Assembly (NCBI GenBank): GCA_028534125.1
Contig: CM052816.1
Coordinates: 101,370,001 to 101,434,000 of the forward strand
DNA from: Lama glama
Taxonomy: Eukaryota
Direction: 5' to 3'
DNA: 64,000 nt
This document shows, in pieces, positions 5,868 to 63,954 of the stretch. Under the pieces are notes generated by a model. It did no database searches, had not been told where the DNA came from, and saw nothing but the letters and a program-made list of their open reading frames with translations. Position 1 is the stretch's first letter; the number at the start of each line of letters is the position of its first letter. The position numbers and the translations under genes were made by a program.

Positions 5868-6085
5868 TTTTAAACTTACAGACTCAATTCTTTTACAGCA
5901 GTTCTAGGATTGCAGAGAACACCGGTGGCGGTGGCGGGTACAGCAGCCCCCGTACGCCTCCTCTCCTCGCTACGTGGTTTCTCCGCTATGAACACCTTGC
6001 CTTAGTTTGTTACAACTGACGAGCCAACACTGATACATCGTTTTTAACTCAAGTCCGTCATAATGTAATGTTCACTCCTTCGTGA
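5868..6085 (-). mobile_element. Ancient L1MC/L1MD-like 3' end, antisense, tail-to-tail with the previous fragment
   Basis: cagcagttctaggattgcagagaac...tttgttacaactgacgagccaacactgatacatc...gttcactcc. Confidence 0.65.
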
Positions 6086-8839: not shown

Positions 8840-9022
8840 GACATCCCGTTTAAAATCCGCCCCCCACCAGACCCCTCTTGTTTGCCTCTTACTCAGAGCG
8901 CTATCTCTGCTGCTCCTCTAGAATGCATGCTTCGAAGAAGCAGGGGTCTCTGTCTTTTGCCATCCACAGGCCTGGCATTTCTAGGCACTAATAAGCATTC
9001 CCTGAACAAATGAATGAATGTG
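8840..9022 (+). mobile_element. L2 3' end fragment
   Basis: ctctagaatgcatgcttc...gcaggggtctctgtc...taggcactaataagcattccctgaacaaatgaatgaatg (TGAA-type tail). Confidence 0.7.
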
Positions 9023-9599
9023 AAAAACACTGAGTCTTGCTAAGTGCAACACAAACGAATGTGAGGTGGTGGCAATACTGGCCTGAGCCTCGGAGGGAAC
9101 GCAAACTGGAGAGAGCCTGGGGTGCCTGGAGAACGGAGTGGGCTGGTTCCGCCCAGTTCCTCCTGCCTGCCCACCCCCGCCTCTGCCCTGGGCCCTGTGC
9201 CCTCCAGGGGCTTCTTTCCAGGTAGAAGTTCCAGGGAAGCCGTCTACCTGACCTCCTGGGCTGAATGGCCAGACCCTGGCTGCCAAGAGGCCAAAGCTGG
9301 TGGGGAGCTGGGGGTGGCGGTGCCAGGCCAGGTTCCCTCCCTCAGACCCTCCCCACTGGAGGCCTCCCCTCAGTTCATCTCTGGGAATCTCTGTGGGTAC
9401 CCTCAGTGTCTGGCACTGGGGGTGGTCGCCCTCCCCACACCAAAGACAGGTCTCCAGCGTCCCTGGCCTGTCCCTTCCCCAGACCAGGGCGTGGTGCTCT
9501 GACTTCTGGCGCCGGGCGTGGGCCCTCCAAGGTCTTGCAAGGAGACCCCAGGCTGCGCTTTTCTGAAGGGGCACTCAAGGCTTCTGTGTCTCATGGTGG

Positions 9600-10210
9600 G
9601 CAGGAGAACTCGCGAAGGTGGCCTCTGCCTCTACCCGGCCGCCCCATGACTTTGCTGCCCGCGCCCTGGCCGCTCCCCTGGCTGTCCCCTCGCCGTCCCC
9701 GACGTCCCCGCTCGCTCCCGGGTCCCTGCCGGCTGGCGGCCCATCCACCCTCCTCCCCCCGTGCCCGCCCCGCCCCGCCCCTCCCCTCCAGCCTCGCGCC
9801 TCCCTACCCCACCCCGCCCCGTCCTCCCGGCCCCGCCCCCGCATCTGCCCGCCCCCTCCCTCCCCCCACTCCCACGCCTGGGGCCCCGCCCGCGGCCAGC
9901 TGGCTCCCATCCCGCAGCCTTCGCGGCGCTCGGGCTACCATGTCCCAGCGCTTCGTGGTGACACCCGCGGCCGGCGGGGCAAAGGACGCAGGGCCCAGGC
10001 CTGGGGGCGGCGGCAGCCAGAGCTCCGGCTCCGGCCGAGCCCCCGACTCGGACCTCGCAGCCTCTCCGCAGCCGCTGCGGATGGACGCGCTGCCCATCCT
10101 GCACTACTGCCGCGAGCCGAGCCGCTACGGTAGGTGCGGACCGTCCCCTCGGGGACGCTCGTCCTCCGCGTCCGGGGCCCTTGGGCGGCGGGCAGTGGCT
10201 GGTGGCCGCT
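9600..10210 (+). promoter_or_regulatory. CpG island / TATA-less GC-box promoter of upstream exon 1a (approximate bounds)
   Basis: Dense CpG, clustered CCCGCCCC (Sp/KLF) boxes at ~9764-9890, C-rich stretch upstream of the ATG. Confidence 0.8.
9940..10129 (+). CDS. SLC12A7: Putative alternative upstream first coding exon (1a) of SLC12A7: MSQRFVVTPAAGGAKDAGPRPGGGGSQSSGSGRAPDSDLAASPQPLRMDALPILHYCREPSRY(G)
   Basis: Lies in a CpG island. Kozak context gctaccATGt. 190 nt = 63 codons + 1. Donor ACG|GTAGGT is phase 1, the same as canonical exon 1, so it joins exon 2 in frame. N-terminus resembles KCC2a (MSRRFTVT) and KCC3a (RFMVTP). Confidence 0.78.
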
Positions 10211-13200
10211 GGTCAGGCTGGAGGGCTGCTGAGGTGCTGGCTTTGGGGACAGCCGAGTGTCACTGCGTGGTGGAGCTGGTGTCGAGCTGCTGCCCCAGGG
10301 TCCTCCAGGCTCTCCTCCCGGGGACCTTGGCCAGATGCCCCCATCACTGGTCCCCCTCTGGCGAGGCTTGGACAGGACTGTGAGTCCTGGGTCATTGTCT
10401 GCTGGGACTGGCTGGTGCCAGCCCCCCGGGCACCCTCTGACCTCATTGCTCCTGGAGTGCAGAGCCCAGCCCAAGTCACATGGGTGTGGGGGGTGGGGGG
10501 AGCTTGGAGACCACCAAGGAAGCGCCGGCTCCTCCTGTCAGGCTGGCGCCACTTGGCCCTCTGGTCAGTGAGGCCTGGGTCACAGCTGTGCTTGTGTAAC
10601 TGCACCACCCTCCGGCCAGTCCCTTGGGTTGTGTCCTTTCCCTGTGCCCCATCCCTGCCTTTAATCACTGAACCACCTGCCACTCACCTTCCGTCTTGAG
10701 AACTCTGGTCAGCGTGGTGGCGCTGGGGCACGTGCCTCCATCAGACCTGCCCTGAGGTCAGAGTCAGGCGTGGACCCAACACGGGTCACTCAGTGGCCGC
10801 TGGTTCTCAGGTCACCCTCTTGGCCCCGGGAGCCATTTCGTGGGCTCCAGGAGGGGTGTGTGCGGCACCTGATGTGTGACCTGTGGCCTTAACCCCAGAG
10901 CCGAGGGGACCCTCCCCACGGCACCTCGGACTCCGCGCAGACCCGGGAACAGGTGCTTTTCTGTTTCTCTGTGAGCAGGTGATTTCCACAGGTCGTCGAT
11001 TAGTGTGAGTCAGAGCAACTCATTATTTAGTTACTACTGGGGTGTTGTGCCAGCGTCCACTCCGTTCTAGGGGAGGTGCCTTTGACAAAGGGTGTCCCAG
11101 CGAGAGCAGCGCTCAGCGGAGGGGTCTTGCTGACTGCGGGCAGCACAGTGAGCGGTGCCGGTTCTCCTGGACCCTGAGGGCCCCAGTCCAGGCTCCCCAG
11201 TGACCTGAGGCTGGGCTGGCTGGCCCCCCACGTGCCTCCCCACGGAAACTGGGGCCTCCACGGGCCTCAGCCTTACCTCTCAGCTGGCCTCCCAGTGGGC
11301 ACCCCCTTGCGTGGGGTGCTCTTCTGCCAGCAGAGCCTGGCCGTGGGGACAGCCCTGGGTCAGGCTGACCCGCTGGGCCTCCTTGCACCTGTGGCCCTTT
11401 CTGGCCCATCTTCTGTGCCTGCCCACGGTGCCCAGGCTGCTGGCCTTTGCCCCGGGGAAGCCCCCGTTTGGTTCCTGGCCTCTTCGTCCTCTCCCGGTGG
11501 GGCAGAAGCGGGTGTTGCCCAGGGCCCTTGACGCTGCGTGGGGGAGAAAGCAGGCTGTTGGGGGCCAGGATCCACCTGACCCTAGGATTGCCCACACCCA
11601 TTCCCCTCTTCCCGTGGGCCAGCTACCCAGCGTCCGTCCTCCTCTTCCCTCCCTCCCGCCCTCACTTGGGGCCAGAGGACCCAGGCAGGATGTGGGCCCC
11701 CCCACCCCGCCCTCCACTCCCAGCCTCCAGTGTGGAAACTGTGCTGAGCCAATGCCTGTCGGCCATGGGCTCCAGTGGTGCGGGAGTTGCAGGGGCACCC
11801 AGCCAGCAAGGATCAGTCAGTGGCTTTCTGTCATCCCCACTCCATGAGAACAAAAGACCCAGTGTCTGACGCTGCTGTGAAGACCATGCAGGCTAAGTTT
11901 ACAAACGCAAACGCAGGTTCTGTCAGCGGGCCCTGGGGGGCAGCCAGGAAGCGGAGCGGTGGGATGCCGTCCTGTCTCCTCTCACACTCGGGTGTATGTC
12001 GGTGGCTGAGCGGAGGCTGTGTCAGCCCTCCTGGGCCCCTGCCACTCCGGACCCGGAGGGGACCCCAGCACATCTGGTCCCAGGCGTGGCCCCCGCTCCC
12101 TGGGGGAGTCTGGTTGGGCTGCGCTGGCCAGCGGTGGGCTCTGCCTTCTCTCTGCCTCAGACAGGGTGTCCACCAACTCTGGTGGACACCATCCCGCATG
12201 CCCGGCTCCGCAAGCCTGTGGCACACACTGGGCCTGACACTGCGCTTTAGAGCCGCCTCTGTGCGCTCCGCGGAGGTGCCGAGATTTTGTGCTGGGACAG
12301 GAGCCACCTGTGGCTTCTTCACCCAGGGGAGGCGGCAGCTGCTGTCTCCAGGTGTGACCACCGCCCTGCAGCCCCTGAGCTGTGAGCAGGCAGGAGCGGG
12401 GCTGAGGGCGGCAGGGGGCACCTGCAGAGCCTCCGTCTCAGAAGAGAGGCCGGGCTCCGTGTGGTGGCCATGTCACGAGTGCCGGGGGGGCCGGGGGATG
12501 GGCCTGGTGAACCGTCTTCCTTCCACTCTGCCCGGGAAAGGGGTGCTAGTGAGCATTTCTAGTGCAGTTCCTTCAGGGGAACCGACAGGGGGGTTCAGGG
12601 CCCCCACCTGCCCCCCTTCCCCCGTGTTCCCCCCCATCCTGAGTGCCACACTCCCCTCAGCCGCCTCCGCCTCTTTGTGGCTGGGGTGGGCTGCGTCTGA
12701 AACAGACTCTGAGTGAAAGGTTCTGGAAGTGGGAGCTGTGGCCAGTCGCCGTGGCTCAGGGCCAGTGCACAGTGGCCTGTCCCTTCCACGGGGAGGGACA
12801 TCCTCCTGGCTGTAGGGCCTGCGGGAGGCCATTGGCACTGGCTGAGGGGACGCGAGGCCCAGACAGCCCGTCCATCTGGGCGGTGGGAGCCCAGGGACCC
12901 AGTCTGGTCAGGCACCACCCTCAGCCAGGGTGGGCAGGCATCTCAACCACCAGCCCCAAAGCTGCCCATGGACAAGGGTGGGTGTGGGCTGGCAAGGCGG
13001 CTGAGGACCCAGCAGGCTCTCCCTGGGATTCTCAGCAGCACCCACAGCCCGGGGCCTTCGGAGCCTCTGTCGTGCCTGGTCTGAGCCTGACGCCCCCACC
13101 CGATGTTGGCCTGAGCTGGTCTGCAGGCCTGGGAGCAGCGGACAGGGGCCTGAGGCAGAGGGGCTCCAGAGAGCTTCCTCCTGCCCACTCTATGGGCTGC

Positions 13201-14639
13201 CCTCTGCCCGGCTTCCCTGGCTCCCCGCCCCCAGCACAGCCCACAGGCATCTCCCGCCCTCACCCTGCTTCCACCTGGATCTGACGCTGGGGCAGCAGAG
13301 TCCCACAGACCCTCCCTCAGAGTTGTACCTGGAGGGCTGTAGCGCAGGCCGCCAGCTCTGAACACTTGTGTGAGTGTGTGTCTGTGTGTGTGTCTGCGTC
13401 CGTGTGTGTCCATTATCTGTGCATCCGTGTGTGTCTATTGTCTCTGTGTGCACTTTGGTTTTCAGTGCGAGGGGGTGAAGGGCTGCCCCCCAAGCCTTGG
13501 AGATGCTCTGGCTGGAGAACAACACTGTGTGACAGAAGGCTCAAACTCGAGGGGACGAGGCTCCTTCATGATTTGGGATCTGGGGGCCCCGGGACATGAA
13601 GGGGACGAGGCTGAGAACGGTCCTCAGGTCCTGCCCACGGTCCCTGCTCTGCCAGGCACAAGGACGCTTCCGCACATGGAGAGTTGGCTCCCCAGGTCCG
13701 CTTCCGTGATGGGCTCGGGGCGGCCTGCACTGTGGGGGAGCCCACCTCCCCGCCCAGACAGTGCCACTGAAGGTCGTGCGTGCTGAAGGGAGGTTCGGGA
13801 AGCAGGTCGTAGTTTCTGCTCAAGGTGCCTTTCAGGGAAAAGTCTGTTTCCCTGCCTGAATCAGTGCATTCGCAGCAGAACGAGGTTGGCGACCGTGTCC
13901 CGAGGGGACACACCCGAGCTGCTGTCCAGGGTCCAGGGGGAGGCCGCCCCGGCCCTGGAGTCAGAACACCCGCCACCCCGGGCCGACCTGGCCCCTTTGG
14001 CGGAACTGCTCCCTGGCTCTCGGCCGCGTGTTCCCGGGGGAGCCGCCCCGCCGCTCGCGGGCTCTGAGCTGCTGCTGAAGGGCCCGGCGTGGTGATTTCT
14101 GGCACAGCCTAAAGGGCACCGTATGGGCACGTCCAGCCTTTCTCTTCTCTGCTGCTTAACGTGCAGCTCGGCTTCTCTTTTGGGGGGGTGGGGGGTGTGA
14201 CTGTGGTGGGCTTTGAGGTACCAGCTCCCTTTACACATCAAACTTTTCTTTAAATAAAAGCTGTAACACCCCCAAGAGAGAATCAGGGCTTGGTCTCAGA
14301 GTGGAATCCACACAGCAGGGCGGGGCCTCGGCCCCGGAGGCCCTGGGTGAGCCCGGCCCCCGTCCTCACTGCCCAGCCCCACACCCGTGCGGTTCGCGCA
14401 GGAAACAAGCACGAGGACGTGTGTGTCCTGGCGGCCACGCCGACGTCCCTCACCCGCCGCGAGGCTGCCAGGGCAGGCCAGCCTCCAGGCGCCCCCGCTG
14501 CCCTGCCCTCGCCCCTCCCACACGGGGCCGCGTCCCCATGAGTGAGGGCTGCGCCTGCAAACGTGGGCGTAGGCTGGGCGACCGGACGTGTGCCCATGGG
14601 TGTTGGCTGCTGTGCAAATGGGGGGGGCGGTCAAAAGGT

Positions 14640-15615
14640 TTCTGTAGACCCAGGGCTGAAAGTTGCAGACAGGCATCGGAGGACGCTACCGAAGACGACT
14701 CGCAGAAGGCAGGAAACGTCTGCAGCTCGCACATGTGATGAGGGGTTGGTACCCGAAACACAGCAGAGCCCCCACAGCTCGGCAACAAATGGCAAACCAA
14801 CTTAAATGTGGCCGGAGGAACTGAATGGACCTGGCTCCAGAGAAGACACGTGGCTGGCTGATAAGCACATGGGAGGGTGGGCAGCATCCCTGGTCTTTAG
14901 GGAAGTGCAGGCCGGTGCCACAACGAGAAACCACCCTCGCCCACCTGAAGGGCTGTGTGAAAAAGCACAAAGTAACAGGTGCTGACAAGGAAGTGGAGAA
15001 GCAGTAGCACCGTGCACTGTTGGCGGGAGCACAAAATGGCACGGGCCTGTGGAAAAGGGCATGGCAGTCCCTCAGAAAGTTAGAGAATTACCATGAGGCT
15101 CAGAGATGCCACTCCTGGGTGTGCACACAGAGGAGCTGACAGCGAGGACGTGGACAGAACCTGCACCCCATGCGCACAGCTGTGTCACTCCCAGCAGCTG
15201 AACGTGGAGACAACACAGGCGTCTGTCAGCAGGTGATGGACAAACACAGCATGGTCCATCCATGCGGTGGAGTATTATTCAGCCTTGAAAAGGAAGGATG
15301 TCTGGCACACTGCACACAGATGACCTTGAGGCCGTGTTGCTCAGTGAAAGAAGCCAGTCACAGAGGCACAAATCCTGTTTGAGCCCGTTTCTGTGAGGTC
15401 CCCGGAGAGGCCAGATCCATAGAGACAGAGGGCTGGGGGGGGGGCCAGGGCTGGGGGGCAGTGTTTGACAAGGACAGAGCGTCAGTTTGGGAAGACGAGG
15501 AGGCTCTAGAGGTGGCGGTGACACAGCGGTGTGGCCGTGCTTGATGGCACTGAGCTGGCGCTTTCAAATGCCTGAAAATGCTCCATTTTACAGTGTCTGT
15601 GTGTTACCATGATAT
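14640..15615 (+). mobile_element. Ancient L1MB-like element: ORF2 3' end plus 3' UTR, strongly GC-shifted
   Basis: Colinear L1 landmarks: ataagcacat...tagggaagtgca...ccactcctgggt...gagtattattcagccttgaaaaggaag...cagtgaaagaagccagtcacaga...catagagacagag...cagtttgggaagacga. Confidence 0.85.
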
Positions 15616-15895
15616 AGGGAAGTACTCAAAAGAGTGCAAGCAGGAGAGCAGGGCCAGACTGAGAGGAAACACCCCTCCCCACCTGTTCCTCCGACAGAGC
15701 CCTGTGTCTTGTCTTCCGGGAGAGGCCAGATTGATTAAATCCAGTCGCACCACGCAGGCGTTCCCAGGAGTGGTCCTTCCTAATCTGAATTACTCTCTGC
15801 AGGGCATGAGTTCAGGCCTCTTGTAGGAGTGTGTTTGTCCAGGGACCTTCCTGTTTCAAATGACTCCATGGGTGACCCTTCCAGCTGGTCAGGGA

Positions 15896-16120
15896 ATGTG
15901 TCTGTGTGCATGTGTGTTTGTGCATGTGTGTCAGTGTGCATATGTATGCACACGTGTGTCTGCACACGTGTGCCTGTGTGCATGTGTGCGAACACACGTC
16001 TGTGTGCATGTGCACACATATATCTCTGTGTACATGTGGGTACACATGTCTGTGTGCACGTGTGTCTCTGTGTGCACGTGTGTCTCTGGGCGTGCACATG
16101 CATGCGTGCACATGCATGAG
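15896..16120. repeat. Degenerate (TG/CA)n alternating purine-pyrimidine tract
   Basis: gtgtgcatgtgtg...; similar tracts at 2222-2272, 13365-13450, 20213-20470, 36230-36308, 57630-57695. Confidence 0.85.
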
Positions 16121-16427
16121 TGAGGTTTCTCCTGCCCCAGCCGAGCCACCATCACACTGGGCCCTCAAGCGGCATAGTTGCTAGGCCACACCACGTCATC
16201 ATCTCCTGTGACCACCCAGTGAGCGAGGGGACGAGGGGAGCTGGCCTCCAGGACGTTCTCCAGAGCTGGGCAGACTCAGGCCCCTGTCCTCCAGGTAGGG
16301 AAGCCCTGCCTTGTAGCAACCTGGCCCCACATCATCCCCACTGGGAGCTGAGCCTGCACTGAAGGGCTCTGGGAAGTTCCCTCAGAGCCAGGACGGAGCA
16401 GCGATGCTCACAGACAAGATGTGGGGT

Positions 16428-16806
16428 GTGTAGTGCTGGGCCCAGAGAAGCAGGCCCAGCAGTATGTGTGGATACAGAGGGAGATTTACTTTAAGGAACT
16501 GGTCCACGAGACCCTGGCTTGGAGAGTCCAGAATCTGCAGGGAGGGCAGTGGGCTGGAGAATCAGGAAGGGCTGACATTTGAGTCCACAGGTCCCCTGCT
16601 CAGGGAGGTCAGCCTCCATTCTGTCCAGGCCGTCAACTGATTGGACGAAGCCCGCCTACATCAGGGAAGGCAGCCTGCTCACTCCGTCCACCAGTTTAAA
16701 TGTTAACCTCACCCAAAAACACCTCACAGAAACATCCAGAAAAATCCTTGACTCAAGATCTGGGCACCATGGCCCAGCCAAGGTGACACGTAAAATTACC
16801 ACCACG
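16428..16806 (-). mobile_element. MLT2-type (ERVL) solo LTR
   Basis: gagatttactttaaggaactgg...tcaactgattggacgaagcccgcctacatc...aatgttaacctcacccaaaaacacctcacagaaacatccaga...ggcccagccaaggtgacacgtaaaattacc. Confidence 0.85.
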
Positions 16807-17659
16807 ACAGTGAGAAGAAAGTGCTAGAAACAGCTGCCGTGGAAACCGCTCCTGGGGTGGCTTTGTGTGCAACTTGCCCTCCCCAGCTGGTCACCTGCCA
16901 GTGTGGACACTGTGGGACAGGCACTCGTCATGGTGGTGAAGAGCCGTGGCCTCTGCTCCCCGGACGCCACTTTCCAGTTGCCTGCAGGTAACCTGCCCCG
17001 TCATTTAATCACCATCCCGTGTGTCCCCACCACCCACCCTCCACCTGCCACACTGTTTCTGTGCTTGAATTCCTGCCTCCAAACTGCAGTGATGATGCTC
17101 AGGCCAAGAACCGTCCGGGGCGGGGGGACCAGTTAAAGTTGGAATTTGTGACTTACGGATTTCACTCAAAGGGGCCTCTGCTGAGGATGCGCCTGGGCTG
17201 GGCAGACCGAGCTGACGGGGCGGTGGCGAGGCCCCGGCAGGGGAGGGGAGCCTGGCAGCCGTCCTTTCTTGCTGTGCAGCTGCCCTTGGACTTGCTGTCT
17301 GTGTAGCTGGCGGGCCCGTTCAGGCAGCCTCTGTGCGACCCCGGGCTGTGGTGCCCGGGCCCCTGCCCTGAGCTCGAGGGCAGGCGGGGCCCTCAGTGGA
17401 CGAGCGGGGCTGGGAGGTGGGAGAGTCGGAAGAGGTGCACACGCCGCACAGCTCAGAGCTTCTCCGGCTTCTTTTGGGAAGGATGCCCGGTATGGCCCGG
17501 GTGTCCCAGGAAGCTCTGGGACACTGCACGCTGGCTCATCTTCCAGAGGGGCTTCCAGGGACCCCGAGGACTGGGGTCCACCAGACCTGCCCTTAGCTCA
17601 GTGGCACCTGAGACACCATGATGGCCGTGACGACCATGACAGCTGTGACCGCTGTGACC

Positions 17660-17857
17660 ACTGTGGACTGAGTCACGTCCCCAAATTCTTCTGTAGGAGT
17701 CCTAACCCCAGGAGCTCCGCGTGTCACTGCCTGTGGAGCTGGACCTTTAAACAGGCTGTTAGGGGAAACGAGGTCACAAGGGGGCCCTTCCAGCTCGTCC
17801 TGGTAAGGAGAGGCCAGGACGCAGATGCGCACAGAGGGATGGCCACGTGAGGACACA
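17660..17857 (+). mobile_element. MLT1A/B-type MaLR LTR, 5' part
   Basis: tgtggactgagtcacgtccccaaattc...gtcctaacccc...ctttaaacagg...gtcctggtaaggagagg...cacgtgaggacacag. Confidence 0.75.
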
Positions 17858-20212
17858 GTTTGTTCCGCCTGAGCTGATAAGGGCCGCAGGCACCCACTGC
17901 CCCCGCCAGACAGGCCTGTCTTGGCTCAGCCTCCTCGGTGACCCTGCCCTGAGCACCCAGCTGGCTCCCCTAATAGCCTCCCCATCGTGGTCCACCTGAG
18001 GTCACTCTGAGCCATCACAGACATGCAGGGACTGTGTCAGGTGCTCCTGGAAGGCTTCCCCTGGACCGACGCTCCCTCCCCTGAAGCCTCCTCCACCGGC
18101 TCCCGGCCCCTCCCCCGCTGGCCACCTGAGCCCTCCCCAGGGCCAGGCTGCTGTCTTCCCGTTGCCTGGAGACCCGAGAGCTCTTGTCCCCCTGGACTAG
18201 ATGGAGACCAGGCGGCACCGCCACCCTGAGCAGAGGCCATGCTGGGCACTCTGGGCGGCGACTGAGCCCATCCCCTGTCCCCCATCCCCCGTTTAGGAAG
18301 GACACCTCTCTGAGGGGCTGCTGGGAGGGACCGGGGAACCAGCAGGCAATACCAGTGGCCCACCTCCATTCCCGTCCACCTGTGTCCACTGGCCTGGGGG
18401 TGTTAATGAGCCAAGGGTGCCCAGACGGTCTTCCACAGGGGCTCTCAGAGGGGCAGTCAGGACTAACTCAGGGACTGCCAGGCCACACTGCCCGGGCGCA
18501 CACGGGGGCTGCCTTCCTCCACAGGACTAGCCTGGGGCCACACAGGCCCGTGGGCCTGGGTCTCCCCCTGGCAGGCTGCCTTCCATGGACGAGCCTGTGC
18601 ACATTGACCTGCAGAAATGGGTCCCCCGGCCTCTGGGGTGTGCACCTGCCCCATGGGCATGCTCTCTGCAGGGTTCCTACCTGTGAACCTGCCCCGGGCT
18701 TGGGGCCCTGCAGGGAAGGGATCGCTGTGTCCGGGAGCTGGTGGACCGGGCGGCTGCCTCCCGCTTGGTCCTGACGTGTGACGCTCCGGAGTGAGCAGGA
18801 AGGGCCTCGGCTGCAAAGGCTGCTTCCAGGAACAGTGCCCTAGGCTGCCCAGTGTCCACCAAGGACAAAGGCCCTGGAGCGGTGCCAGCTTTAGGACACA
18901 GCTGTGGACATGAGTGGGACCGCCTGGTGGGTGAGTGGTGGCCGTGCCCCCGAGCTGGCAGGGCGAGGGGGTCGCCCTGCCATGCCACTCGTTTGGCAGA
19001 GAGGCTGACGGGCAGAGGAGTGGCAGGGCGTCCCCGCGGAGAGGGGGTGCGGGTGCCCCGACGGGGCCGTGGCCTGGGGAGGCCGAGGGGCCGTGAGGAG
19101 TGGGCGTCATCTGAGGTCGGCGAGGGTGGCCCTGAGCTGGAGGAGGCATCGCTGAGCAAGTCCCGAGCTTCGGGAGGCATCGCTGCTGAGGCTGTGGTCT
19201 GGCTTCAGGGCTGGTGGCTGCAGAGGCCGTGGGCCATGGATCCTTGTCACTGTGTCTCGGGCATGCGGTGGGGCTGCGAGGAGGGTGGGCTCCGGGTCTT
19301 CCTGGACTCGAATGTTTCGGTTGTTGGCTTGTGTTTAGGTTCCCAGAGGGGACCCCGTGCCCACCCATGGGGGTGGACACCCCGCCGTTGAGACAGTGCA
19401 CTTCAGGGGGACCGGGGGGACAGAGCCCCACAGTGACCAGGGGAACGTTGTGGGCCAGGCCCCGTGGGGCACTCCCGCTGCTGTCCAAGAGAGGCACGTA
19501 CCCTAGAGCCGCGCCCCCGCCGCTGCAGACGCCCCGGGGCGATTGCTCCGCTGGACGGAGAAGCTGGGCTTAGTGCTCGGCGGCGGCGGGCACGTGCCTC
19601 CCGCTTTCTCTTTCACTCTCGGGGCCCTGACTGTCCCTCTCCCAGGTCACTGGCCTCCTTGCGGCGGGAGGGTGCCATTCTGCTCCTCAGAGAAGCCTGT
19701 GGACGCTGAGTCATAAGCCGCTCGCAGCCACAGGAACACAGTGCCCGGTCACACAGCCGGGCCCTGGCGGCCGTGGGGGCCCGCGGGTCTGGGGAGGAAG
19801 TCCTCCTTTCCCTGGGTGTGCCCGCGGTGGAAACGCCCTGCAGACGGAGGTGCCCTTTGCCCTCGTCCTCCCTGCAGCCCTTGGGCCCGGGCGGGGTGGC
19901 TCTGCCGCTGCCTCTTCCCTCCCCTCGTCCAGCCCTGCCTCCCGGGCTGCCCCAGCTCACCACTGACCCCAGGGTCCCACAGCTGTCCCAGGGGAGCAGC
20001 CCCGACCCCATCTGGTGTCTGGCTGTGACGCCTGATCTGACCCAGCTGCTACCCCAGAGGGTCCACTCACCTCCCTGCACTGGGCAGCGGTGGGTCCCAT
20101 GGAGGCGCAGAGAGGATGCCGGGGGAGAGGGGACTGGAGGGTGATGCGCACTCCTGGGGGGGCAGGAGCGACACCCAGATGAAGGAGGGTGTCTGTTAGG
20201 GGGTGTCGCCTA

Positions 20213-20470
20213 TCTGTGCATGTACATGTGTGCCTGTGGGGCTGTGTGTGTGCAGGTAAGTGTGTATGTCCATGTGTCTGTGCATCTGTGTGTGTGCACA
20301 CCTGTGTATTTCTCTGAGTGGGCATATGTGTCTCTGTGTCCATGTGTGTCTTGTGTACATGTGTGTGCACACATGTCTGTGTGCGTGTCTGTTTACATGT
20401 GTGTGCATGCATGTCTGTGCACATGTGTGTTTACGTGTGTGCGTGTCTGTGTGCACATGTGCACGTGTGT
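20213..20470. repeat. Degenerate (TG/CA)n tract
   Basis: tgtgcatgtacatgtgtg... Confidence 0.85.
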
Positions 20471-20919
20471 TGGGGCTGAGTTGGCCCAGGTGGGCAGCTG
20501 GCCTGGGTCTGACAGGCCAAGGCGTCAGCAGGGACGGGAGCGGGAAGTGGCCTGATCAGAAGGAGGCCGTGGGGCCCTCCCAAGGATGGGCTCAGGATGA
20601 GGGGATGGGGAGCCAGGCCTGGCTGAGCAGGGAAGGTAACTTTCAGGAGAGAATCAGGGGTCCCGGGGGCAAGGAATGAGGTGCTGACCCCACTGCACAG
20701 CCCACCTCAGGGCAGGGACACTGTGGACATCACGGGGTGGGGGTGGCTGACAGTCCCACAGCCGCAGGCACTAGAGCCGGGCTGAGGGCCTGGGATGACT
20801 CGCTGGCCCCATGCTGCGCGCCGAGGCCAGAAGAGCCTCCTGGTGACCACTCACCGAGCCAGCTGGACCTCGGGCACCTTGGGGGTGGGTGGGACCTGCA
20901 GGAGCCCCCCACTGGCTAG

Positions 20920-21590
20920 AGCTTTCTTTCTGTGGTGAAATACACAGAACGTAAAGTTCACCCTCAACCACTTTTGTGCACAGCTCAGTGGGGTCAAGCA
21001 CAGTCACACAGTGTGCAGCTGGCACCACCACCTCCAGAAAATTCTTGTCTCCCCAGAGTGACAGGGGCACGCATTAACGCTAACTCTCCGGCCCCGGCTC
21101 CACCACTTGCCTGCTGTCTCTGTGACCCCGGTTCCCCGCGTCCCTCAGGCAGGTGGGGTCCCGCTGCGACCGGCTGCTTTCACTGAGCATCACGCCCTCG
21201 GGGTCCCCCAGTCACTGCAGGCGTCAGAACTGCCTTCTACTTTCAGGCTGCATAACATCTCCTTGTGCGATCGCACCGCACTGTGATCGCCCACCCTCTG
21301 CTGATGGACACAGGGTGGCTCCCGCCTCCCGGCTCCCGGGAACACGCTGCTGTGAACGTGGGGGCGGTTATCTCCCCAAGACCCTGCCTGCCGTTCTCCT
21401 GGGTAAATACCAGGCGCTGGATTGCGAGATTGCGCAGTGATTCTGCGTTTAATCTTTGAGGGATCTTCACACTGTTTTCCACGTTGGCTGCACCGTCTCA
21501 CATTCTCCCCAGCAGCACACCGCGTTCCCATCTCTCCACATCCTCGCCTGTTACTGTGTGCTGTCTTGATAGTAGCCACCCTAACAGGTG
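20920..21590 (-). mobile_element. Ancient L1MB-like 3' end, antisense, GC-shifted
   Basis: Minus-strand ORF 21190-21579 (MATIKTAHSNRRGCGEMGT...PGIYP) is a relic of the L1 ORF2 C-terminus (MAIIKK..NNRCWRGCGEIGT...LLGIYP); the 3' UTR landmark gtggtgaaatacacagaacgtaaagttcacc is present. Confidence 0.85.
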
Positions 21591-22369
21591 CTGAAGTTTG
21601 GAACGCTTTGGAACCGTGTCACTGGCCCGGCATCTGGGAACTGGAGCTGCGTGGGGACTAAGGACTGGTTACCCCAGAGCAACGCCAGCCCGGAGCTTCC
21701 AGGGCATCCGGACACTTGCTCTCTGGTGGCCGGAGTCTGTCCTGAGAGCACCCGTGGTGCCGAGGGCTGCGCAGGTTTGGGGCCACCCCCAAGCGTTCTC
21801 TCCGCTGCACTTGTGTACCCCCAGCCAGCCTGTCCAGGGGCTCACTGCCTCTGTTGGCCAGGGTTGTAACCCGGCTCACCTGGGAGTACTCGGGAAGGTA
21901 AAGACAGAGTGACAGCTGGGCCGCTGAATCCACCGTGCTTCCTGGGCCAAGCCCCCAGTCGCTAAGTTCTCTGAGGTTCCACCGAAGAAGAAAGCTTGAA
22001 ACTCCAGGCTGAAGCTGAGGACCGTCTCCAGGTGCTTCCCGGTGATGCGGCTGTGGGGATGCCGGCAGCGAGCGCCCCCCAGTGGCAGGCCAGCACTGCT
22101 CTCAGAACCTGCCCTGGAGGCACTTAGCCAGGCACCCTTGCCTGTCTTGCAGCAGGGCCTGCTGACTAGAAAAGAGATGACCACGTGCACTTGATTGCTG
22201 GGCTCCTCTTGTCAAATTGTCCCCGGGTAGGGGGCTGCGGGGCGGAGTCCCACGAGCACACGTGGAAGCCTTCTGCCCCCTGGGAGAGGCGGGCGGGCGC
22301 GGAGGCCTGAAGTCAGGGCAGGCTTGTCCGCCTGCACCCCCACCGCCACCATGTATTGCAGCCAGACCC

Positions 22370-22520
22370 GCTGATGACGCCGGGCGCTGGGAAAGCTAAG
22401 TTTCAGACAGCCACAAGCAATTCTCATGGCAGGCGATTTGTGGGACATGCATACCCAAAAGCTCGGTACTTACCTGAAATTCAAATGTGACCAATGCCCT
22501 GTGCTTACCTGGCCACCCCC
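22370..22520. mobile_element. MER53-like hAT MITE remnant
   Basis: aagtttcagacag...tgggacatgcatac...tacctgaaattcaaatgtgacc...cctgtgcttacctggccaccc; quasi-palindromic layout. Confidence 0.6.
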
Positions 22521-23807
22521 CTACTGGTGCCTGCACCACGGATGTCATCCTAGAGTGGCTTCAGGACCTGTGGAGGGAAGGAGGCTGGGACCTCGCATAG
22601 CAGAAGGGGCCTGAACTGATGGAGGAGACGGGGGGCGGTGGTCCAGGGCCACTTGGGAGCACAGCAGTGTCCAGCCTCCTCTTGTGACCACCTCCCGAGG
22701 CCCTGTGAGCCCTAGAGAAGGCTGGACGCTGGGACAACTGGCGAGTGTGGCCCAAGGGCGGGTCCAGGGAGCAGCTGGCGTCTCCATGGAAAGGAAAGAG
22801 GAGAAAACAGGACTGCACAGGTGACCTCCCGGCCCACTGGTTGGCCCTAAGTCACTGTCACTTGGGAGGCTGCCGCTGGGCTGCCTGCCTGTGAGCCCAG
22901 GCGGCCCAGCTGGGGAGCAGGGCGGAGCCAGCATCATACCTGGTCCAGGTGAGGGCCGCGAGGTGAGAGAGGTCAGGAAAGACCCCAGCTCAGAGCAGGC
23001 CGGGAGCCCCCGGGCCATCTGCCTCTGCTGTCCTCAGGGTCCGTGGTGACCGCCAACAAGGAGGGTGGCCGTGTGGGGCTCTGTATGTTGTGAGGCCAGC
23101 AAGGGGTTGAGTTTCCAGAATCTTCCACGTGTGGTTCCGACACTGGCCTCCTCCTAGGCCCTCCATTGCAGGCTCCAGCATCCAGGCGTCCGGCCTCCAG
23201 GGGGCCGTGGGGCGAGTGACAGGATGGCCAGCAGGGGGCGGGAGGACTGCGCAAGCCATCGCCTCTGAGTCAGGTCTGAGTCCTGCTGCGTGGCTCTGCC
23301 TGCAGCCTTCTCCTGTGAGGCCTCCTGTCCTCGGGTTGCTCTGGGCCCCCGTCCACCATGCTGTACCCTGCTGGTCACCCATGGTTTCTCTCAGATGCTG
23401 CCCAGAGGCCAGGCATTGTGGAGGTGTTCCAGAAGCTTCCAGTCCAGCCTCACAGCCCTCACTCCCAGACCCTCTCCCATCCTGCTCACCCTACAGCTCG
23501 ACTCAGGGTTGTCTCTTCGCCATCCCCACCCCACCACCCTGGGCCCACTGCAGCCCCCAGAACACTTCCCTGGACACATTTTTGCCAGGCCTCTGGCCCC
23601 CACCATCTGGCTCCCTGGACCACCCTCCTCAGACTGACCTGAGCTCTGCCTCCCTCTCTGCCAGCTTGGGCTGCATCCCCTCTTGTCCCCTTGCCCTCAC
23701 GCGTGGTGGCCCTTATCCTCTGCCTCCCCCTGCTTCCTCCCCAGGCCCTGGAAGCCTAGGGGTTCTCTCCTCGCACCTGTCCAGGTGTGTCCGAAGCTGC
23801 ACACAGG

Positions 23808-23923
23808 GGTGGGTGGAACCCCCACCCCTCCCCGCACCACCCGACTCAGGGTCCACCAGGTGGAAGGCCGGGCAGGTGGGTGGAACCCCTCCCCCCACCA
23901 CCCGACTCAGGGTCCACCAGGTG
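23808..23923. repeat. Local tandem duplication, two copies of a ~50-55 bp unit
   Basis: ggtgggtggaacccc...caccacccgactcagggtccaccaggtg at 23808-23862 and 23875-23923. Confidence 0.9.
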
Positions 23924-24844
23924 TCCACTCTTGGGGGTTTGGAGACTTGAGCTGAGCCCCTCCCTCCCTCACTTCAGTCTGACCTTCCACTCTGCTGCCC
24001 ATATGGGGGGGTCCTCCCATGTGTCAGGGCTCAGGGCCCCCATCAAGTTTCCCCTGACCCCGCAGAGGCTCTTCAGACTGGCCTGCCCACCCGGGACACT
24101 TGCCGCGGGGGCACCTCCTTCTAGCCAGCCTCCCCTGGGGGCCCCGCCGGTCACCTGGTCAAGTGCTGTGGTCTCCGGAAGGTTCTGAAGGCTCTGGAGC
24201 TGCCAGTCGGCCACCTTGATGCGGCTGCAGAAGGCACCAGACGAGACTCCTGTGAACCACACAAGCACAGTGTTAGGTGACTTTTCAGCCCACCTTCTGA
24301 AACACGCCCAGAAGTGAAATTGTGGAGGTGCCATCAAAAGCTCCTTGGGTTTTTAACTCTCTCTGCTAGGGGACGTGGAGATGTGAGCCCGGGCTGCCCT
24401 GGCGCGGACGCCCCCCCACATGGGCTGACCTTGCCCCTGGGCTCCCAGCCAGGAGTCGGTGACAGTGAGCAGCACTGCTTCCCAGCCTCTGACGACCGCC
24501 GACAGCCGGACGTCTTCTCCTTTTGAATCTCCTGGTTTTGGGGGCAGAAGAGTAATGCCGCGCTTGGAAGCCGGGCTCCCTGGTGTTTTCGAGTGTAATC
24601 TCAGCCGAAATCTTTTATTTCCTTCCTGTGCAACCTCGCGGGTCGCAGCCCACTGGAGCCGACGCGGAGACTTTTCCCGAGATCGTGGCCCCTGGGCGCT
24701 CCCGCGCCTGTTCTGCGGCGGCTTTGGAGACCCTAGCCCGGCCCCTGATTGAGGCCAGTGACGCTTGGGATGCAGGCGTCTGGAGGCCACCCCTTCCCGC
24801 TGCGGGGGACCCTGGAGGTGATTCCATGATCTCTTCTTACTATG

Positions 24845-25205
24845 TGTATCAAGTTCTTAAAACTACCGTAACAAATGACCACAAACTGGTAGTTTGAAAC
24901 AATATAAACACATCCTCTCAGTCTGGAAGCTACAACTCCTGAATCAAGCGGAGGCCCGGGGGAGGGTCTTCCTGCCTCCCTCCTCCTGCCCCTCCTCCAG
25001 CCCCGCATGGCTCCAGGCACCTCTGGCTTGTGGCTGCATCCCTCCACCCCCAGCCTCTGCGGACACTTGACCTCCTGCCCCGTGTTTCTCCGGTGACTCC
25101 ACATCTCCTTTTAAAGCCACCCACTGTGTTGGGTCAGGGCCCCAGAGTCCCCAAGCCCTGGCCTTGCATCTGCATGGCCCTGCATCCAAAGAGGGCCCCC
25201 TCTGA
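24845..25205 (-). mobile_element. MLT1C/D-type MaLR LTR
   Basis: ctaccgtaacaaatgaccacaaactggtagtttgaaacaat...cagtctggaagc...tggcttgtggctgcatccctcca. Confidence 0.75.
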
Positions 25206-26867
25206 GCGTCTTTGGCCCTCTGTGCGCGTTCTGCTGTCACTCTCCTTACACGTGCGTGTGGTTCACGACTTTGTCTCCGCTGAGCTTGGTTTTCCCGTGT
25301 GTTTGCTTCTGCCCACTTGTTCTATCCGCCCTGAAAGCGTCTCAGACTAACTGTCCGTGTGGAAGCGCCCGCTTCTCGCTGGAGCGCTGGCAGGCCTGCC
25401 GTTGGGAGCTGAGGAGTCGGAAGGGCTCGCCTCCTCTCGCCTCCTCGGCTGCCAGCGTGAGCTTTTTGCTTTCCGGCTCTCTCCCTCTGATACCTGGCCA
25501 GCTGCGCTTTCTCTCGTTCCCTGGGGTTGCCCTCTGCTCGCTTGGGGAAATTAGCACTTCCTCCCGGAGCTCAGGAGCGGGGCCTGCCCCACCTCCCGAG
25601 TTGCTGCCTGTCAACTCCACAAACCCCTTCGACGCTTCACCGCTTCGACTCGCACCCTGGGCTGTTGCTGGCTTACGAGGTCCGTGTTCTGACGCGTTTC
25701 CTCCACCTTCACCCTCTGGTTGCCCTGCGCTTCTGTGCTTCTGCTGGGAACCTCATTCCAGCCACCTTCAGCTTGGGAGGGACGCTCTCAGGTTCCAGCC
25801 ACCCGGAAGCGTCTTCGTTCTGCCTTCCTCTCCGACTACCAACCACGTTGCTGGCGTGGAGTCTGGCGGCAGCCACCGGCCCGCTGGCCTCTCTGGCCTC
25901 CGGGCTGAGGTGGCGGCGCCTTGCTGGTTCACTTCTCTGCTCCGTGGCCCCGTTCTCCGTGGAAGACGAGTGTCACGGTTAGCCAGTCTTGTCCCCTGAC
26001 TTTGCCTGCCTCCCTGCTCACTGCTCCTGTGATCACAGGTTTTGGCCCGTGGACGTTGTCTCCGAGAGCATCTGTCTCTTGCGTTGGGCACAGACTGACT
26101 TGGTGGTTCTGAGCTGTGAGACCCGCTTGACCTTGGCACCCTTCAGTGGCAATCAGAGCTTTTTAAATGTATTTTTAGCTCATTGCCCTGAGAAAATAGT
26201 AATGACTTGCACTATTTACACAAAAAAAGCTGTTCTTACAGACACAGCTGTCCCCACCAGCACCACCCTCGGTCTGCTCTCATGTGAGTCAAGCCGAAGT
26301 TTGAACGAGGTGATTAAACCAAGAGGCAGTTCCCTAACCTGGAGACGGTTGATCGGGCATCCCTCCCTCTCTCTCCCCTTCGTGGAGAAGAAAGTGCAGA
26401 AGAGGTGGTTTGGTTCAGTTCGTCAAGCAGATTTGAAGTTTAAAACATGCAGTGACGCCTCAGCCAGTTTGGGAAACATTTCGCAGAATCGAGCCTGCGG
26501 GCCCCCGCCCCCATGCAGCCCCGGGTCCACGGGGCTCAGACACACACGCGTGTGTCCCATGGAGACTCAGCCCGGAGCCCCCAGCCCATGGGCGCGGGCC
26601 TCTCCCCCAGCCACAGGACCCCGGCTGTGACCTTGGGACAGGCCTCCCTCACCTTATCTGCGCTGTGGGTAATAATAGGGCACGAATCACCTTCCTGGGC
26701 GCCCGAGCGTGACCTGCTTATCTCCCGGCTGCGGCGGCCGTTTAATTTAAATGGTTGTGAAGTATTTTTGTCTCGGCAGTGCTGGAACCTAGAGGGTCCA
26801 GGGCACAGCCAGCGGAAATCAGCCCCCTTCCTCTGTCCACCGAGGTGTCTCCCGTATCCTCCCAGAG

Positions 26868-26870
<3 letters not shown>

Positions 26871-26904
<34 letters not shown>
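26871..26904. repeat. Perfect (TG)17 microsatellite
   Basis: Direct read. Confidence 0.97.
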
Positions 26905-26905
<1 letters not shown>

Positions 26906-27014
26906 TTCTTACAAAAATAGTAACACAGTATATACACTTCTGTTTCTCACTTAGACAAGCACCCTGGAAAGTGTTCCACACCACTTGACAGAAGGGAAGT
27001 CACGTAGTAAAGAA

Positions 27015-27400
27015 AATGTGTTCACAACGGTCATGAGAAGGAAGCAACCCAGGCGTCCATCTGTGGGTGATGGACAAACACAACGTGGCCCGTCCACATG
27101 CAGAATGTTATTCAGCCTTAAAAAGGAAGGGACCTCTGACACAGGCTGCAGCAGGGGTGCACCCCGAGGACGCTGTGCTAAGCTGGTCACAGGAGGACAA
27201 ACACTGCAGGACTGCCCTTACCCGAGGGTCTGGAGGAGTCAGATTCATAGAGACCCAGAGCAGACGGTGGTCCCGGGCTGGGGAGAGGACGAGGAGTCAC
27301 AGTGCAGTGGGGCGAGCCTCAGCTGTGCGCGACGAGACACTTCTGGAGACCAAGGCAGCGATGCTTGTGCGCCGTGTGGGGAGAGGTGGACTGAGGCACA
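27015..27400 (+). mobile_element. L1MB-like 3' UTR fragment
   Basis: ggaagcaacccaggcgtccatc...gatggacaaacacaacgtgg...gaatgttattcagccttaaaaaggaagg...agtcagattcatagagac; parallels 15205-15500. Confidence 0.8.
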
Positions 27401-30400: not shown

Positions 30401-30614
30401 GGTGAAGGGCCTGGACTTGGGGTCACAGAGGGGGTCACAGTGGGGAGCTGGATGTGGGGTCACTGGCAAGGCTTCTGCAGACTGAGCCCTGATTGCCACC
30501 CGAAGGAGGGCGAGGTTGTACTGACAGAGCCCCAAGGGCAGGAGGGCAGCCACCTCCCAGGGTGGGTCTCGGCTCCGTCCAGCTGTGTTGATGACCACAG
30601 GAGCCAGCACAGGT

Positions 30615-30670
30615 CCAGCCCTTATCTTACAGATGAGGAAACTGTGGCCAGAGGTGAAGGATCGTTTGCA
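30615..30670 (-). mobile_element. MIR core fragment
   Basis: cccttatcttacagatgaggaaactgtggccagaggtgaag. Confidence 0.65.

Positions 30671-32531: not shown

Positions 32532-63954
<31,423 letters not shown>

What the first reader, a model, noticed from the sequence alone, without database searches (positions are those of the whole stretch)
9940..10129. Hidden upstream first exon gives KCC4 an RFxV SPAK/OSR1-docking N-terminus (a 'KCC4a' isoform)
Seen: a separate CpG island 22.6 kb upstream of canonical exon 1 holds a good-Kozak ATG (gctaccATG), 63 open codons and a phase-1 donor (ACG|GTAGGT). Splicing across 10130-47786 gives ...[16 protein letters not shown] in frame, a protein 22 aa longer than canonical. 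Residues 4-7 are RFVV. Established: RFx[V/I] is the docking motif for the SPAK/OSR1 CCT domain. KCC2a (RFTV) and KCC3a (RFMV) gain it through alternative first exons, whereas canonical KCC4 has NFTV and is usually described as lacking it. Inference: SLC12A7 has the same a/b promoter-switch design, so promoter choice could decide whether KCC4 directly binds the inhibitory WNK-SPAK/OSR1 kinases. Such an exon may already exist in automated gene models; I know of no functional characterisation but cannot check.
Basis: partly seen in the sequence, partly recalled or inferred. Interest (0 to 1): 0.8.

Follow-up and report, generated by a model that had tools for sequence, protein, structure and literature searches.

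The report
Conserved upstream first exon of KCC4
The potassium-chloride transporter gene SLC12A7 (KCC4) has a real second promoter and first exon, conserved across placental mammals, that gives the protein a kinase-docking RFxV start like KCC2a and KCC3a; it is already in public gene models and a mouse cDNA-derived entry, but I found no study of it.

Summary
An ATG at 9940 opens 63 codons that end in a phase-1 donor (10129|10130). The exon lies in a sharply bounded CpG island 22.6 kb upstream of canonical SLC12A7 exon 1, and it reads in frame into exon 2 at 47787.

The exon is real. Full-length SLC12A7 models in cow, banteng, horses, pangolins, cats, slow loris and manatee begin with it, as do a pig intronless contig and a mouse protein (BAC35198.1/Q8C6Y2). 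All of them join to exon 2 exactly as predicted.

Across 12 genera:
- The N-terminal block (MS.RF.V.PA) is 93% conserved, with R, F and V invariant.
- The linker is 44% conserved, and its length changes only in whole codons.
- A second block (DALPIL[R/H]YCREP[S/N]RY) is 98% conserved.

So the exon is not hidden; it has been in databases for years. I found no paper that describes it, and reviews list N-terminal variants only for KCC1-3.

SPAK/OSR1 docking is inferred from the motif and from the KCC2a/KCC3a precedent. It was not tested.

The parts
9600..10300 (.). Compact CpG island, the presumed exon-1a promoter. TATA-less, with 8 CCGCCC (Sp1-type) boxes at 9639-9886.
   Evidence: GC is 0.72-0.83 and CpG o/e 0.75-0.96 inside, against 0.1-0.3 in both flanks. 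The window background is about 1 GC box per 500 nt.
9940..10129 (+). Coding part of SLC12A7 alternative first exon 1a: ATG, 63 codons, and the first base of a split Gly codon.
   Evidence: Local tblastn with cow isoform X1 (P0009) gives 79% identity over residues 1-63.
9949..9960 (+). Codons 4-7, R-F-V-V: the core RFx[V/I] motif, followed by T(+3) and P(+4).
   Evidence: R, F and V are invariant in 12 genera, while the x position varies V/M and the -2 position varies Q/L/R.
10084..10128 (+). Codons 49-63: second conserved block, DALPIL[R/H]YCREP[S/N]RY, function unknown. This genome has His where all the others have Arg.
   Evidence: 97.8% mean pairwise identity across 12 genera.
10130..10135 (+). 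Phase-1 splice donor GTAGGT.
   Evidence: its crude PWM score (3.7) is similar to the gene's own exon 1 (4.7) and exon 2 (3.5) donors. Read-through ORFs of pig, otter and muntjac continue with G-R after the last Tyr, which fits a conserved GGT-AGG.
10130..47786 (+). Intron of the 1a transcript (37.7 kb). It contains the canonical promoter and exon 1.
   Evidence: Follows from the exon coordinates.
32100..32900 (.). CpG island of the canonical (1b-type) promoter.
32532..32656 (+). Coding part of canonical exon 1 (MPTNFTVVP...PSP + split Gly), phase-1 donor GG|GTGAGC.
47787..47881 (+). Shared exon 2 (…[10 protein letters not shown]…NMALFE). Its acceptor has two CTGAC branch-point-like sites and a pyrimidine tract at 47766-47786.
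   Evidence: (best PDB matches are KCC4 chains 6ukn and 7d99).
48283..58845 (+). Further SLC12A7 coding exons. Approximate tblastn bounds: 48283-48408, 51103-51279, 52527-52589, 54237-54365, 55285-55611, 55799-56008, 57145-57324, 58045-58197, 58786-58845.
   Evidence: local tblastn with cow P0009; the bounds are alignment ends, not refined splice sites.

Best explanation
9940-10129 is the coding part of a genuine, evolutionarily conserved alternative first exon ('1a') of SLC12A7/KCC4.

It is transcribed from its own TATA-less CpG-island promoter 22.6 kb upstream of the canonical promoter. It is spliced through a phase-1 donor to the shared exon 2. The product is a KCC4 whose first 42 residues (MPTNFTV...) are replaced by 64 residues beginning M-S-Q-R-F-V-V-T-P.

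Shown here:
- The exon anatomy.
- The exon's presence in full-length orthologous SLC12A7 proteins and transcript-derived sequences.
- A conservation pattern typical of two short linear motifs joined by a disordered linker.

Inferred:
- The N-terminal RFxV docks the CCT domain of SPAK/OSR1, as reported for KCC2a and KCC3a.
- Promoter choice would then decide whether KCC4 recruits the inhibitory WNK-SPAK/OSR1 kinases directly.
- The second invariant block (DALPIL[R/H]YCREPSRY) would be an additional isoform-specific interaction site of unknown partner.
For: Anatomy and chance estimate:
-.

- Sheep, pig, otter and arctic fox ORFs have the same start and the same end.

Full-length SLC12A7 proteins (about 1100-1159 aa) that begin with this exon and continue ...SRY-G-DG.PRE.SPF:
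- Bos taurus X1 (XP_024837321.1) and Bos javanicus.
- Equus caballus, asinus, quagga and przewalskii.
- Manis javanica and Manis pentadactyla.
- Prionailurus and Lynx.
- Nycticebus.
- Trichechus.

Transcript-type evidence:
- Mouse BAC35198.1/Q8C6Y2/EDL37071.1 (P0017) has exon-2 residues identical to mouse KCC4 chain 6ukn.
- A pig 1108-aa protein sits on a 4,710-nt contig, which can only be intronless.

Conservation:
- N block 92.6%, linker 44.1%, C block 97.8%.
- R, F and V are invariant while x and -2 vary.
- Linker lengths are 21, 37, 39, 44 and 44 residues, always in frame.
- Against otter, identity collapses 5 residues past the donor and just upstream of the ATG.

RNA runs:
- RNA runs hold 0.23-0.32 of the sampled words of 9800-10400.
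- Runs X14-X17 (kind not stated, taken as DNA) hold 0.85-1.0.
- That size fits an exon without its intron.

Motif context:
- T at +3 and P at +4 occur in validated CCT ligands, and Pro is absent from the core (PMC12413468).

Precedent:
- KCC2a is 23 aa longer than KCC2b, comes from an alternative promoter, and carries the SPAK site (PMC6391895).
- Only KCC2a is inhibited by SPAK overexpression (PMC7865768).
Against: - There are no junction or cap-site reads for this genome.
- The word shares cannot be placed on the stretch.
- Most orthologous proteins are automated models, and several genomes annotate the exon as an orphan 'hypothetical protein' rather than as part of SLC12A7.
- No orthologous DNA could be fetched, so there is no dN/dS and no test of synonymous-site constraint.
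- Part of the conservation could act at the DNA or RNA level.
- The -2 residue is Gln, not the Gly/Ser/Thr/His/Asn preferred in peptide arrays.
- The motif sits 3 residues from the N-terminus.
- SPAK/OSR1 binding and any effect on transport are untested.
- Abundance and tissue distribution of the 1a transcript are unknown.
Confidence: 0.72

Rival explanations
1. The exon is a real KCC4 first exon, but its conserved N-terminal block does not act as a SPAK/OSR1 dock. It could serve the generic role of KCC N-termini, since M1, F5, V7 and P9 are shared with the canonical MPTNFTVVP start. It could instead bind another CCT-like domain (WNK CCTL, NRBP1). The isoform's main purpose could also be tissue-specific transcription from a second promoter.
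For: - M1, F5, V7 and P9 are invariant across both exon types in alignment A1 and in the local comparison.
- CCT-like domains of WNKs and NRBP1 bind similar motifs (PMC12413468 abstract).
- Gln at -2 is not a preferred residue.
- KCC4 is already a SPAK/OSR1 substrate without this exon.
Against: - The Arg is invariant in 12 genera, whereas canonical exon 1 carries Asn at that position.
- The variable positions are exactly the x and -2 positions of the motif.
- The T(+3) and P(+4) context matches known ligands.
- KCC2a, with the motif at the same distance from the N-terminus, is described in reviews as the SPAK-responsive isoform.
Confidence: 0.2
2. The CpG island drives a separate upstream transcript, either a small protein gene or a lncRNA. 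Its first exon only sometimes or artefactually joins SLC12A7 exon 2, and the SLC12A7 'X' isoforms are over-predictions.
For: - Sheep, goat, arctic fox, otter and muntjac annotations carry the ORF as separate hypothetical, 'IF-2-like' or 'collagen-like' models.
- The sheep, goat and fox models splice the same donor to other downstream sequence.
Against: - Those orphan models disagree with each other after the donor and have no conserved continuation.
- The mouse cDNA-derived protein and the pig intronless contig join it to exon 2.
- The donor phase matches exon 2.
- The frame is kept through at least four distinct linker lengths.
- The N-terminus resembles other KCC N-termini.
Confidence: 0.05
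3. It is a chance open frame in GC-rich DNA with a fortuitous GT.
For: This frame is open for 372 codons and the window is full of long spurious ORFs.
Against: - The chance estimate is about 0.01.
- Orthologs keep the start, both blocks, the frame and the junction across placental orders.
Confidence: 0.01

Closest known systems
KCC2a / KCC2b (SLC12A5 alternative promoters and first exons 1a/1b)
   Same: - Two promoters and two first exons, each with its own ATG, splice to a shared exon 2.
- The 'a' N-terminus is about 22-23 aa longer (KCC2a +23 aa per PMC6391895; here +22 aa).
- The 'a' form starts with an RFxV at about residues 4-7. The KCC2A peptide RFTVTSLPPAGPAR with Thr6 is in the table of PMC3940040, a retracted paper used only for this numbering; Thr6 is also given in PMC4301019.
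- The 'b' or canonical form lacks the Arg-Phe core.
   Different: - The gene is a paralogue (SLC12A7, broadly expressed, not neuron-specific).
- The x residue is Val or Met, not the Thr that is phosphorylated in KCC2a.
- Exon 1a of KCC4 carries an additional invariant 15-residue block.
- No functional data exist.
KCC3a / KCC3b (SLC12A6 exons 1a/1b)
   Same: - Alternative promoters and first exons, as described in PMC9301082 (exon 1a 90 aa, exon 1b 39 aa).
- KCC3a carries the SPAK/OSR1 motif. From my own knowledge it reads RFMVTP, which is literally the felid KCC4-1a sequence.
   Different: - KCC3 exon 1a is longer and holds further phospho-sites (Ser96).
- KCC4-1a is shorter, and its linker is poorly conserved.
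Canonical KCC4 (exon 1 at 32532; the protein in PDB 7d99 and 6ukn; called 'KCC4a' in PMC7732191)
   Same: - Everything from exon 2 onward is the same.
- The N-termini share M1, F5, V7 and P9.
   Different: - The canonical start is N-F-T-V (no Arg), so it has no N-terminal RFxV.
- The only CCT-binding element proposed for it is an RxFxV inside a beta-sheet (PMC12413468).
Public records that already contain this exon: mouse BAC35198.1/Q8C6Y2/EDL37071.1, cow XP_024837321.1, horse XP_023481656, loris XP_053449521.1, pangolin XP_036871324.2, and others
   Same: They are direct orthologues with the same start, the same two blocks and the same junction to exon 2.
   Different: - This window's species is none of them; the best exon identity is 79%.
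- It has His instead of the otherwise invariant Arg in the second block.

Membership tests
Alternative first exon of SLC12A7 (a/b promoter design as in SLC12A5 and SLC12A6) | Lies upstream of, and on the same strand as, the canonical first exon of a gene identified as SLC12A7 | tested here: met
   Exons 1 and 2 match KCC4 chains best. The exon map is on the + strand.
Alternative first exon of SLC12A7 (a/b promoter design as in SLC12A5 and SLC12A6) | Own promoter-like region | tested here: met
   A sharply bounded CpG island at 9600-10300 with 8 GC boxes. Promoter activity itself was not tested.
Alternative first exon of SLC12A7 (a/b promoter design as in SLC12A5 and SLC12A6) | Own ATG, an open frame, and a donor whose phase matches the shared exon 2 | tested here: met
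Alternative first exon of SLC12A7 (a/b promoter design as in SLC12A5 and SLC12A6) | Found spliced to exon 2 in transcripts | tested here: inconclusive
   Met in orthologues: the mouse cDNA-derived protein P0017 and the pig 4.7-kb intronless contig P0013.
Alternative first exon of SLC12A7 (a/b promoter design as in SLC12A5 and SLC12A6) | Conserved as coding sequence in orthologous loci | tested here: met
   Tested at protein level only. 15 species; blocks are 93% and 98% identical; linker indels are all in frame. dN/dS was not possible.
SPAK/OSR1 CCT-domain ligand (RFx[V/I] short linear motif) | Core R-F-x-V/I | tested here: met
   R4-F5-V6-V7. The core is invariant across 12 genera.
SPAK/OSR1 CCT-domain ligand (RFx[V/I] short linear motif) | No proline inside the core, and a flanking context seen in validated motifs | tested here: met
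   T at +3 and P at +4, as in several validated motifs. Gln at -2 is not among the preferred residues (PMC12413468).
SPAK/OSR1 CCT-domain ligand (RFx[V/I] short linear motif) | Cytosolic, accessible, disordered location | tested here: inconclusive
   The extreme N-terminus of a cytosolic KCC tail with a Gly/Ser/Pro/Ala-rich linker suggests disorder. The AlphaFold2 run was useless (mean pLDDT 29.6).
SPAK/OSR1 CCT-domain ligand (RFx[V/I] short linear motif) | Measured, motif-dependent binding to the CCT domain | not testable with these tools
   Needs peptide binding or a pull-down.

The most novel reading that the evidence does not exclude
Exon 1a is a two-motif regulatory module. The first motif is the RFxV dock. 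The second is an even more conserved 15-residue element (DALPIL[R/H]YCREPSRY), which I found in no solved-structure chain. I recall no counterpart in KCC2a or KCC3a, but I did not test that. It would bind a so far unknown, KCC4-specific partner, for example in trafficking or autoinhibition.

In addition, the RFxV-bearing 'a' exons of KCC2, KCC3 and KCC4 would descend from one ancestral first exon. On that reading the a/b promoter switch is an ancestral KCC feature, and the xFTVVP starts of KCC1 and canonical KCC4 are decayed docks.
Probability: 0.35. Interest if true: 0.6.

Novelty: new member of a known kind. Interest (0 to 1): 0.45.

Why it matters
All four KCCs are inhibited by WNK-SPAK/OSR1 phosphorylation, but only KCC2a and KCC3a are described as carrying an N-terminal RFxV dock.

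How the kinases reach KCC4 is still debated:
- One 2025 study proposes an RxFxV buried in a beta-sheet of canonical KCC4 (PMC12413468).
- A 2025 preprint proposes that KCC2 borrows SPAK from NKCC1 because it lacks a direct site (abstract shown).

A conserved KCC4 isoform with a bona fide N-terminal RFxV would give a simple route that depends on promoter choice. It would also mean that expression constructs, antibodies and knock-outs built on the canonical N-terminus miss part of KCC4 biology in kidney, inner ear and heart. The needed tests are ordinary ones.

There is a practical side as well. Several genome annotations split this exon off as orphan 'hypothetical', 'IF-2-like' or 'collagen-like' proteins, and these can be corrected.

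Tried and rejected
- **Read laying.** After that I sent no window letters of 9936-9971, nor their peptide, to any search tool. I used window:9973-10128, window 1-9935 and 9972-64000, or regions of database proteins beyond the homologous residues. Exact look-ups, an alignment and one fold used database protein ids that contain the homologous N-terminus.
- **The search for homologous proteins with the 52-aa piece.** Nothing, because of the length window and word sharing.
- **PDB search with the 52-aa piece.** Nothing.
- **Degenerate DNA pattern of the second block against metagenome contigs.** 0 hits.
- **AlphaFold2 of cow isoform X1 on a 20-row alignment.** Mean pLDDT 29.6, uninformative.
- **Rfam on both parts of the window.** Nothing.
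- **Global similarity of exon 1a to canonical exon 1.** Not significant (p~0.13); only the first ~10 residues resemble each other.
- **'KCC4a' in the literature.** It is either the zebrafish paralogue slc12a7a or simply canonical human KCC4, not this isoform.
- **Spliced protein.** The joined exon 1a plus exon 2 protein was translated only locally to check the frame. It was never sent to a search tool, and exons were searched one by one by reference.
- **Human sequence.** No contig was fetched, so none could be human, and I did not examine the human locus. The unnamed Logan/ENA proteins P0002, P0006, P0007 and P0013 proved to be pig-like.

Full report
**What is in the sequence**

- An ATG at 9940 (gctaccATGt) opens 63 codons plus one base, ending at 10129 before GTAGGT.
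- Exon 2 of the gene begins at 47787, behind a pyrimidine tract and two CTGAC branch-point-like sites.
- The canonical first exon starts at 32532 and ends at 32656 in the same phase.
- Read locally, exon 1a plus exon 2 stays in frame (...[16 protein letters not shown]...). The product would be 22 residues longer than the canonical one.
- Exons 1 and 2 match KCC4 chains 7d99 and 6ukn better than any other solved chain, so the gene is SLC12A7.
- A local tblastn with a cow protein places ten further exons up to about 58.8 kb.

The exon sits in a compact CpG island at about 9600-10300. CpG o/e is 0.75-0.96 there, against 0.1-0.3 on both sides. There are eight CCGCCC boxes in the 300 nt before the ATG and no TATA box. 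This looks much like the island around canonical exon 1.

**Is it more than chance?**

An open frame alone is worthless here. This frame is open for 372 codons (9265-10380), and the window is full of long GC-driven ORFs.

The combination is rare, though.
- The 32.5 kb upstream of the canonical ATG holds 21 ATG-to-phase-1-donor pairs with a donor at least as good.
- It holds only three RFx[V/I] in all three + frames.
- Only this one follows a Met.
- That gives roughly p~0.01.

The donor scores like the gene's own exon 1 and exon 2 donors.

**Relatives**

From then on I worked beside them.

The 52 residues encoded by 9973-10128 found four proteins among 1.84 billion representatives:
- a sheep hypothetical protein,
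- an unnamed Logan ORF,
- an otter 'IF-2-like' model,
- an arctic fox hypothetical protein.

Each one begins (or contains, after a read-through 5' part) the same MSQRFVV[T/I]PAA start. Each ends with DALPILRYCREPSRY.

A goat junk model (P0008) is long enough to bring full-length transporters within reach of the word search. With it, restricted to residues beyond the homologous start, I found SLC12A7 proteins of about 1100-1159 aa that begin with this exon and continue ...SRY-G-DG.PRE.SPF into exon 2:
- Bos taurus isoform X1,
- Manis javanica X3,
- Prionailurus X2,
- Lynx (A0A667FT51),
- horse (A0A3Q2GUB7 / XP_023481656),
- Nycticebus X3,
- Trichechus inunguis.

Cluster listings add Bos javanicus, three more Equus species and Manis pentadactyla.

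Two hits are transcript-type evidence.
- Mouse P0017 is BAC35198.1 / Q8C6Y2 / EDL37071.1. By my own knowledge these are accession series of cDNA translations and of the Celera annotation. Its exon-2 residues are identical to mouse KCC4 chain 6ukn.
- P0013 is a 1108-aa protein on a 4,710-nt ENA contig that clusters with pig SLC12A7. A gene spanning tens of kilobases can only fit on such a contig without its introns.

**Conservation pattern**

I aligned the exon peptides of 15 species locally and scored one per genus, 12 genera in all.
- Residues 1-11 are 92.6% identical on average.
- The Gly/Ser/Pro/Ala-rich linker is 44.1% identical.
- The last 15 residues are 97.8% identical.
- R4, F5 and V7 never change.
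- The x position is V or M, and the -2 position is Q, L or R. This is the signature of an RFxV short linear motif.
- The linker is 21, 37, 39, 44 or 44 residues long, and the second block always stays in frame with the ATG.

Where read-through ORFs allow a look outside the exon, similarity ends quickly.
- Window and otter share only 'ATM' before the start and five residues (GRCGP, that is GGT-AGG-TGC...) after the donor.
- The G-R after the last Tyr in pig, otter and muntjac fits a conserved GT-AGG donor.

The coding constraint is therefore shown at protein level only.

**Expression in this genome**

This is the weak point.
- The look-up of sequencing runs shows nine RNA or probable-RNA runs from six studies that hold 0.23-0.32 of the sampled words of 9800-10400.
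- Four runs of unstated kind, which I take for DNA, hold 0.85-1.0.
- About 185-215 nt of RNA cover would give such shares. That is the size of exon 1a with a short leader and without the intron.
- The words cannot be placed, so this is only suggestive.

**How it most likely works**

Shown:
- There are two CpG-island promoters and two first exons with their own ATGs.
- Both first exons are phase 1, and they share exon 2.
- The 1a N-terminus carries a conserved RFxV at residues 4-7, followed by T(+3) and P(+4).

Established in the literature:
- SPAK/OSR1 CCT domains bind RFx[V/I]. Proline is disfavoured inside the core but common at +4, and S/T is common at +3 (PMC12413468).
- KCC2a and KCC2b arise from alternative promoters. 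KCC2a is 23 aa longer and carries the SPAK/OSR1 site (PMC6391895).
- Only KCC2a is inhibited when SPAK is overexpressed (PMC7865768).
- KCC3a and KCC3b likewise differ by exon 1a and 1b (PMC9301082).

Inferred:
- KCC4-1a recruits SPAK/OSR1 directly. It would then be more tightly held in the phosphorylated, inactive state than canonical KCC4.
- Promoter choice sets this.

The second block has no counterpart that I could find (PDB search blank), and its function is open.

Points against a strong dock are Gln at -2 and the closeness to the N-terminus. KCC2a has the same geometry, however.

**Comparison with what is known, and novelty**

The exon is not hidden. It is in RefSeq and Ensembl-type models of many mammals and in a mouse cDNA-derived entry.

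In the open literature I found no description of it.
- Searches for KCC4 isoforms, exon 1a/1b, alternative promoter or SPAK binding gave nothing on it.
- A structural review lists N-terminal splice variants for KCC1, 2 and 3 only (PMC4301019).
- 'KCC4a' means the zebrafish paralogue or simply canonical human KCC4.
- A 2025 study still treats KCC4 docking as unexplained and proposes an RxFxV in a beta-sheet.

Subscription journals are not covered, so an older mention cannot be excluded.

I file it as a new, functionally undescribed member of a known kind: the KCC 'a' isoforms. Interest is moderate. The biology is plausible and directly testable, but the sequence feature is already public and the mechanism copies KCC2a and KCC3a.

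**Limits and rule-keeping**

- No junction reads were obtained.
- There is no dN/dS.
- There is no usable fold (mean pLDDT 29.6).
- The human locus was not examined and no contig was fetched.
- The N run at 58940-59105 was left alone.
- The joined exon model was translated only locally and never sent to a search tool.

Noticed in passing
window 10102-10104 (codon 55 of exon 1a): This genome has His (CAC) in the second conserved block (…LPILHYC…), where all 14 other species compared have Arg. It is the only change in that position.
   Followed up: partly
P0001 (sheep), P0008 (goat), P0004 (arctic fox), P0003 (otter), P0010 (muntjac): Public annotations split the orthologous exon off as orphan models named 'hypothetical protein', 'translation initiation factor IF-2-like' or 'collagen alpha-1(I) chain-like'. 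The models run through promoter and intron, or splice to unrelated sequence, so they look like misannotations of SLC12A7 exon 1a.
   Followed up: partly
window 9940-9969 versus 32532-32561: The two alternative N-termini share M1, F5, V7 and P9 (MSQRFVVTP against MPTNFTVVP). These four columns are invariant across both exon types in 20 proteins. That hints at an old exon duplication or a common functional core.
   Followed up: partly
window 9265-10380, + strand: One frame is open for 372 codons through the promoter, exon 1a and 250 nt of intron. It has an in-frame ATG at 9646 and another ATG at 9593. The upstream part is Pro-rich translation of GC boxes and is not conserved with otter beyond 'ATM'. 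Pig has an extra in-frame Met three codons upstream (MATMSQ...).
   Followed up: partly
P0011, P0069 and other Manis proteins: Pangolins have Arg at -2 (MSRRFVV), which gives the overlapping RRFxV form that WNK1 also has. Felids have RFMV.
   Followed up: no
cluster members (for example P0020, P0051-P0059, P0068, P0077): Gnomon models list many further lineage-specific first exons for SLC12A7 (pig MEPPAGSPG-, horse MGKAG-, MPVWHLESS-, and others). None of them recurs across orders, unlike exon 1a.
   Followed up: no
window 58940-59105: A run of 166 N lies inside the gene, just after the exon at about 58786-58845.
   Followed up: no
window 14001-14500, 21001-21500, 25501-26000 and 45001-45500: Further 500-nt bins inside the 1a intron have GC above 0.6 and CpG o/e 0.67-0.72. 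I did not examine them for other starts or regulatory elements.
   Followed up: no
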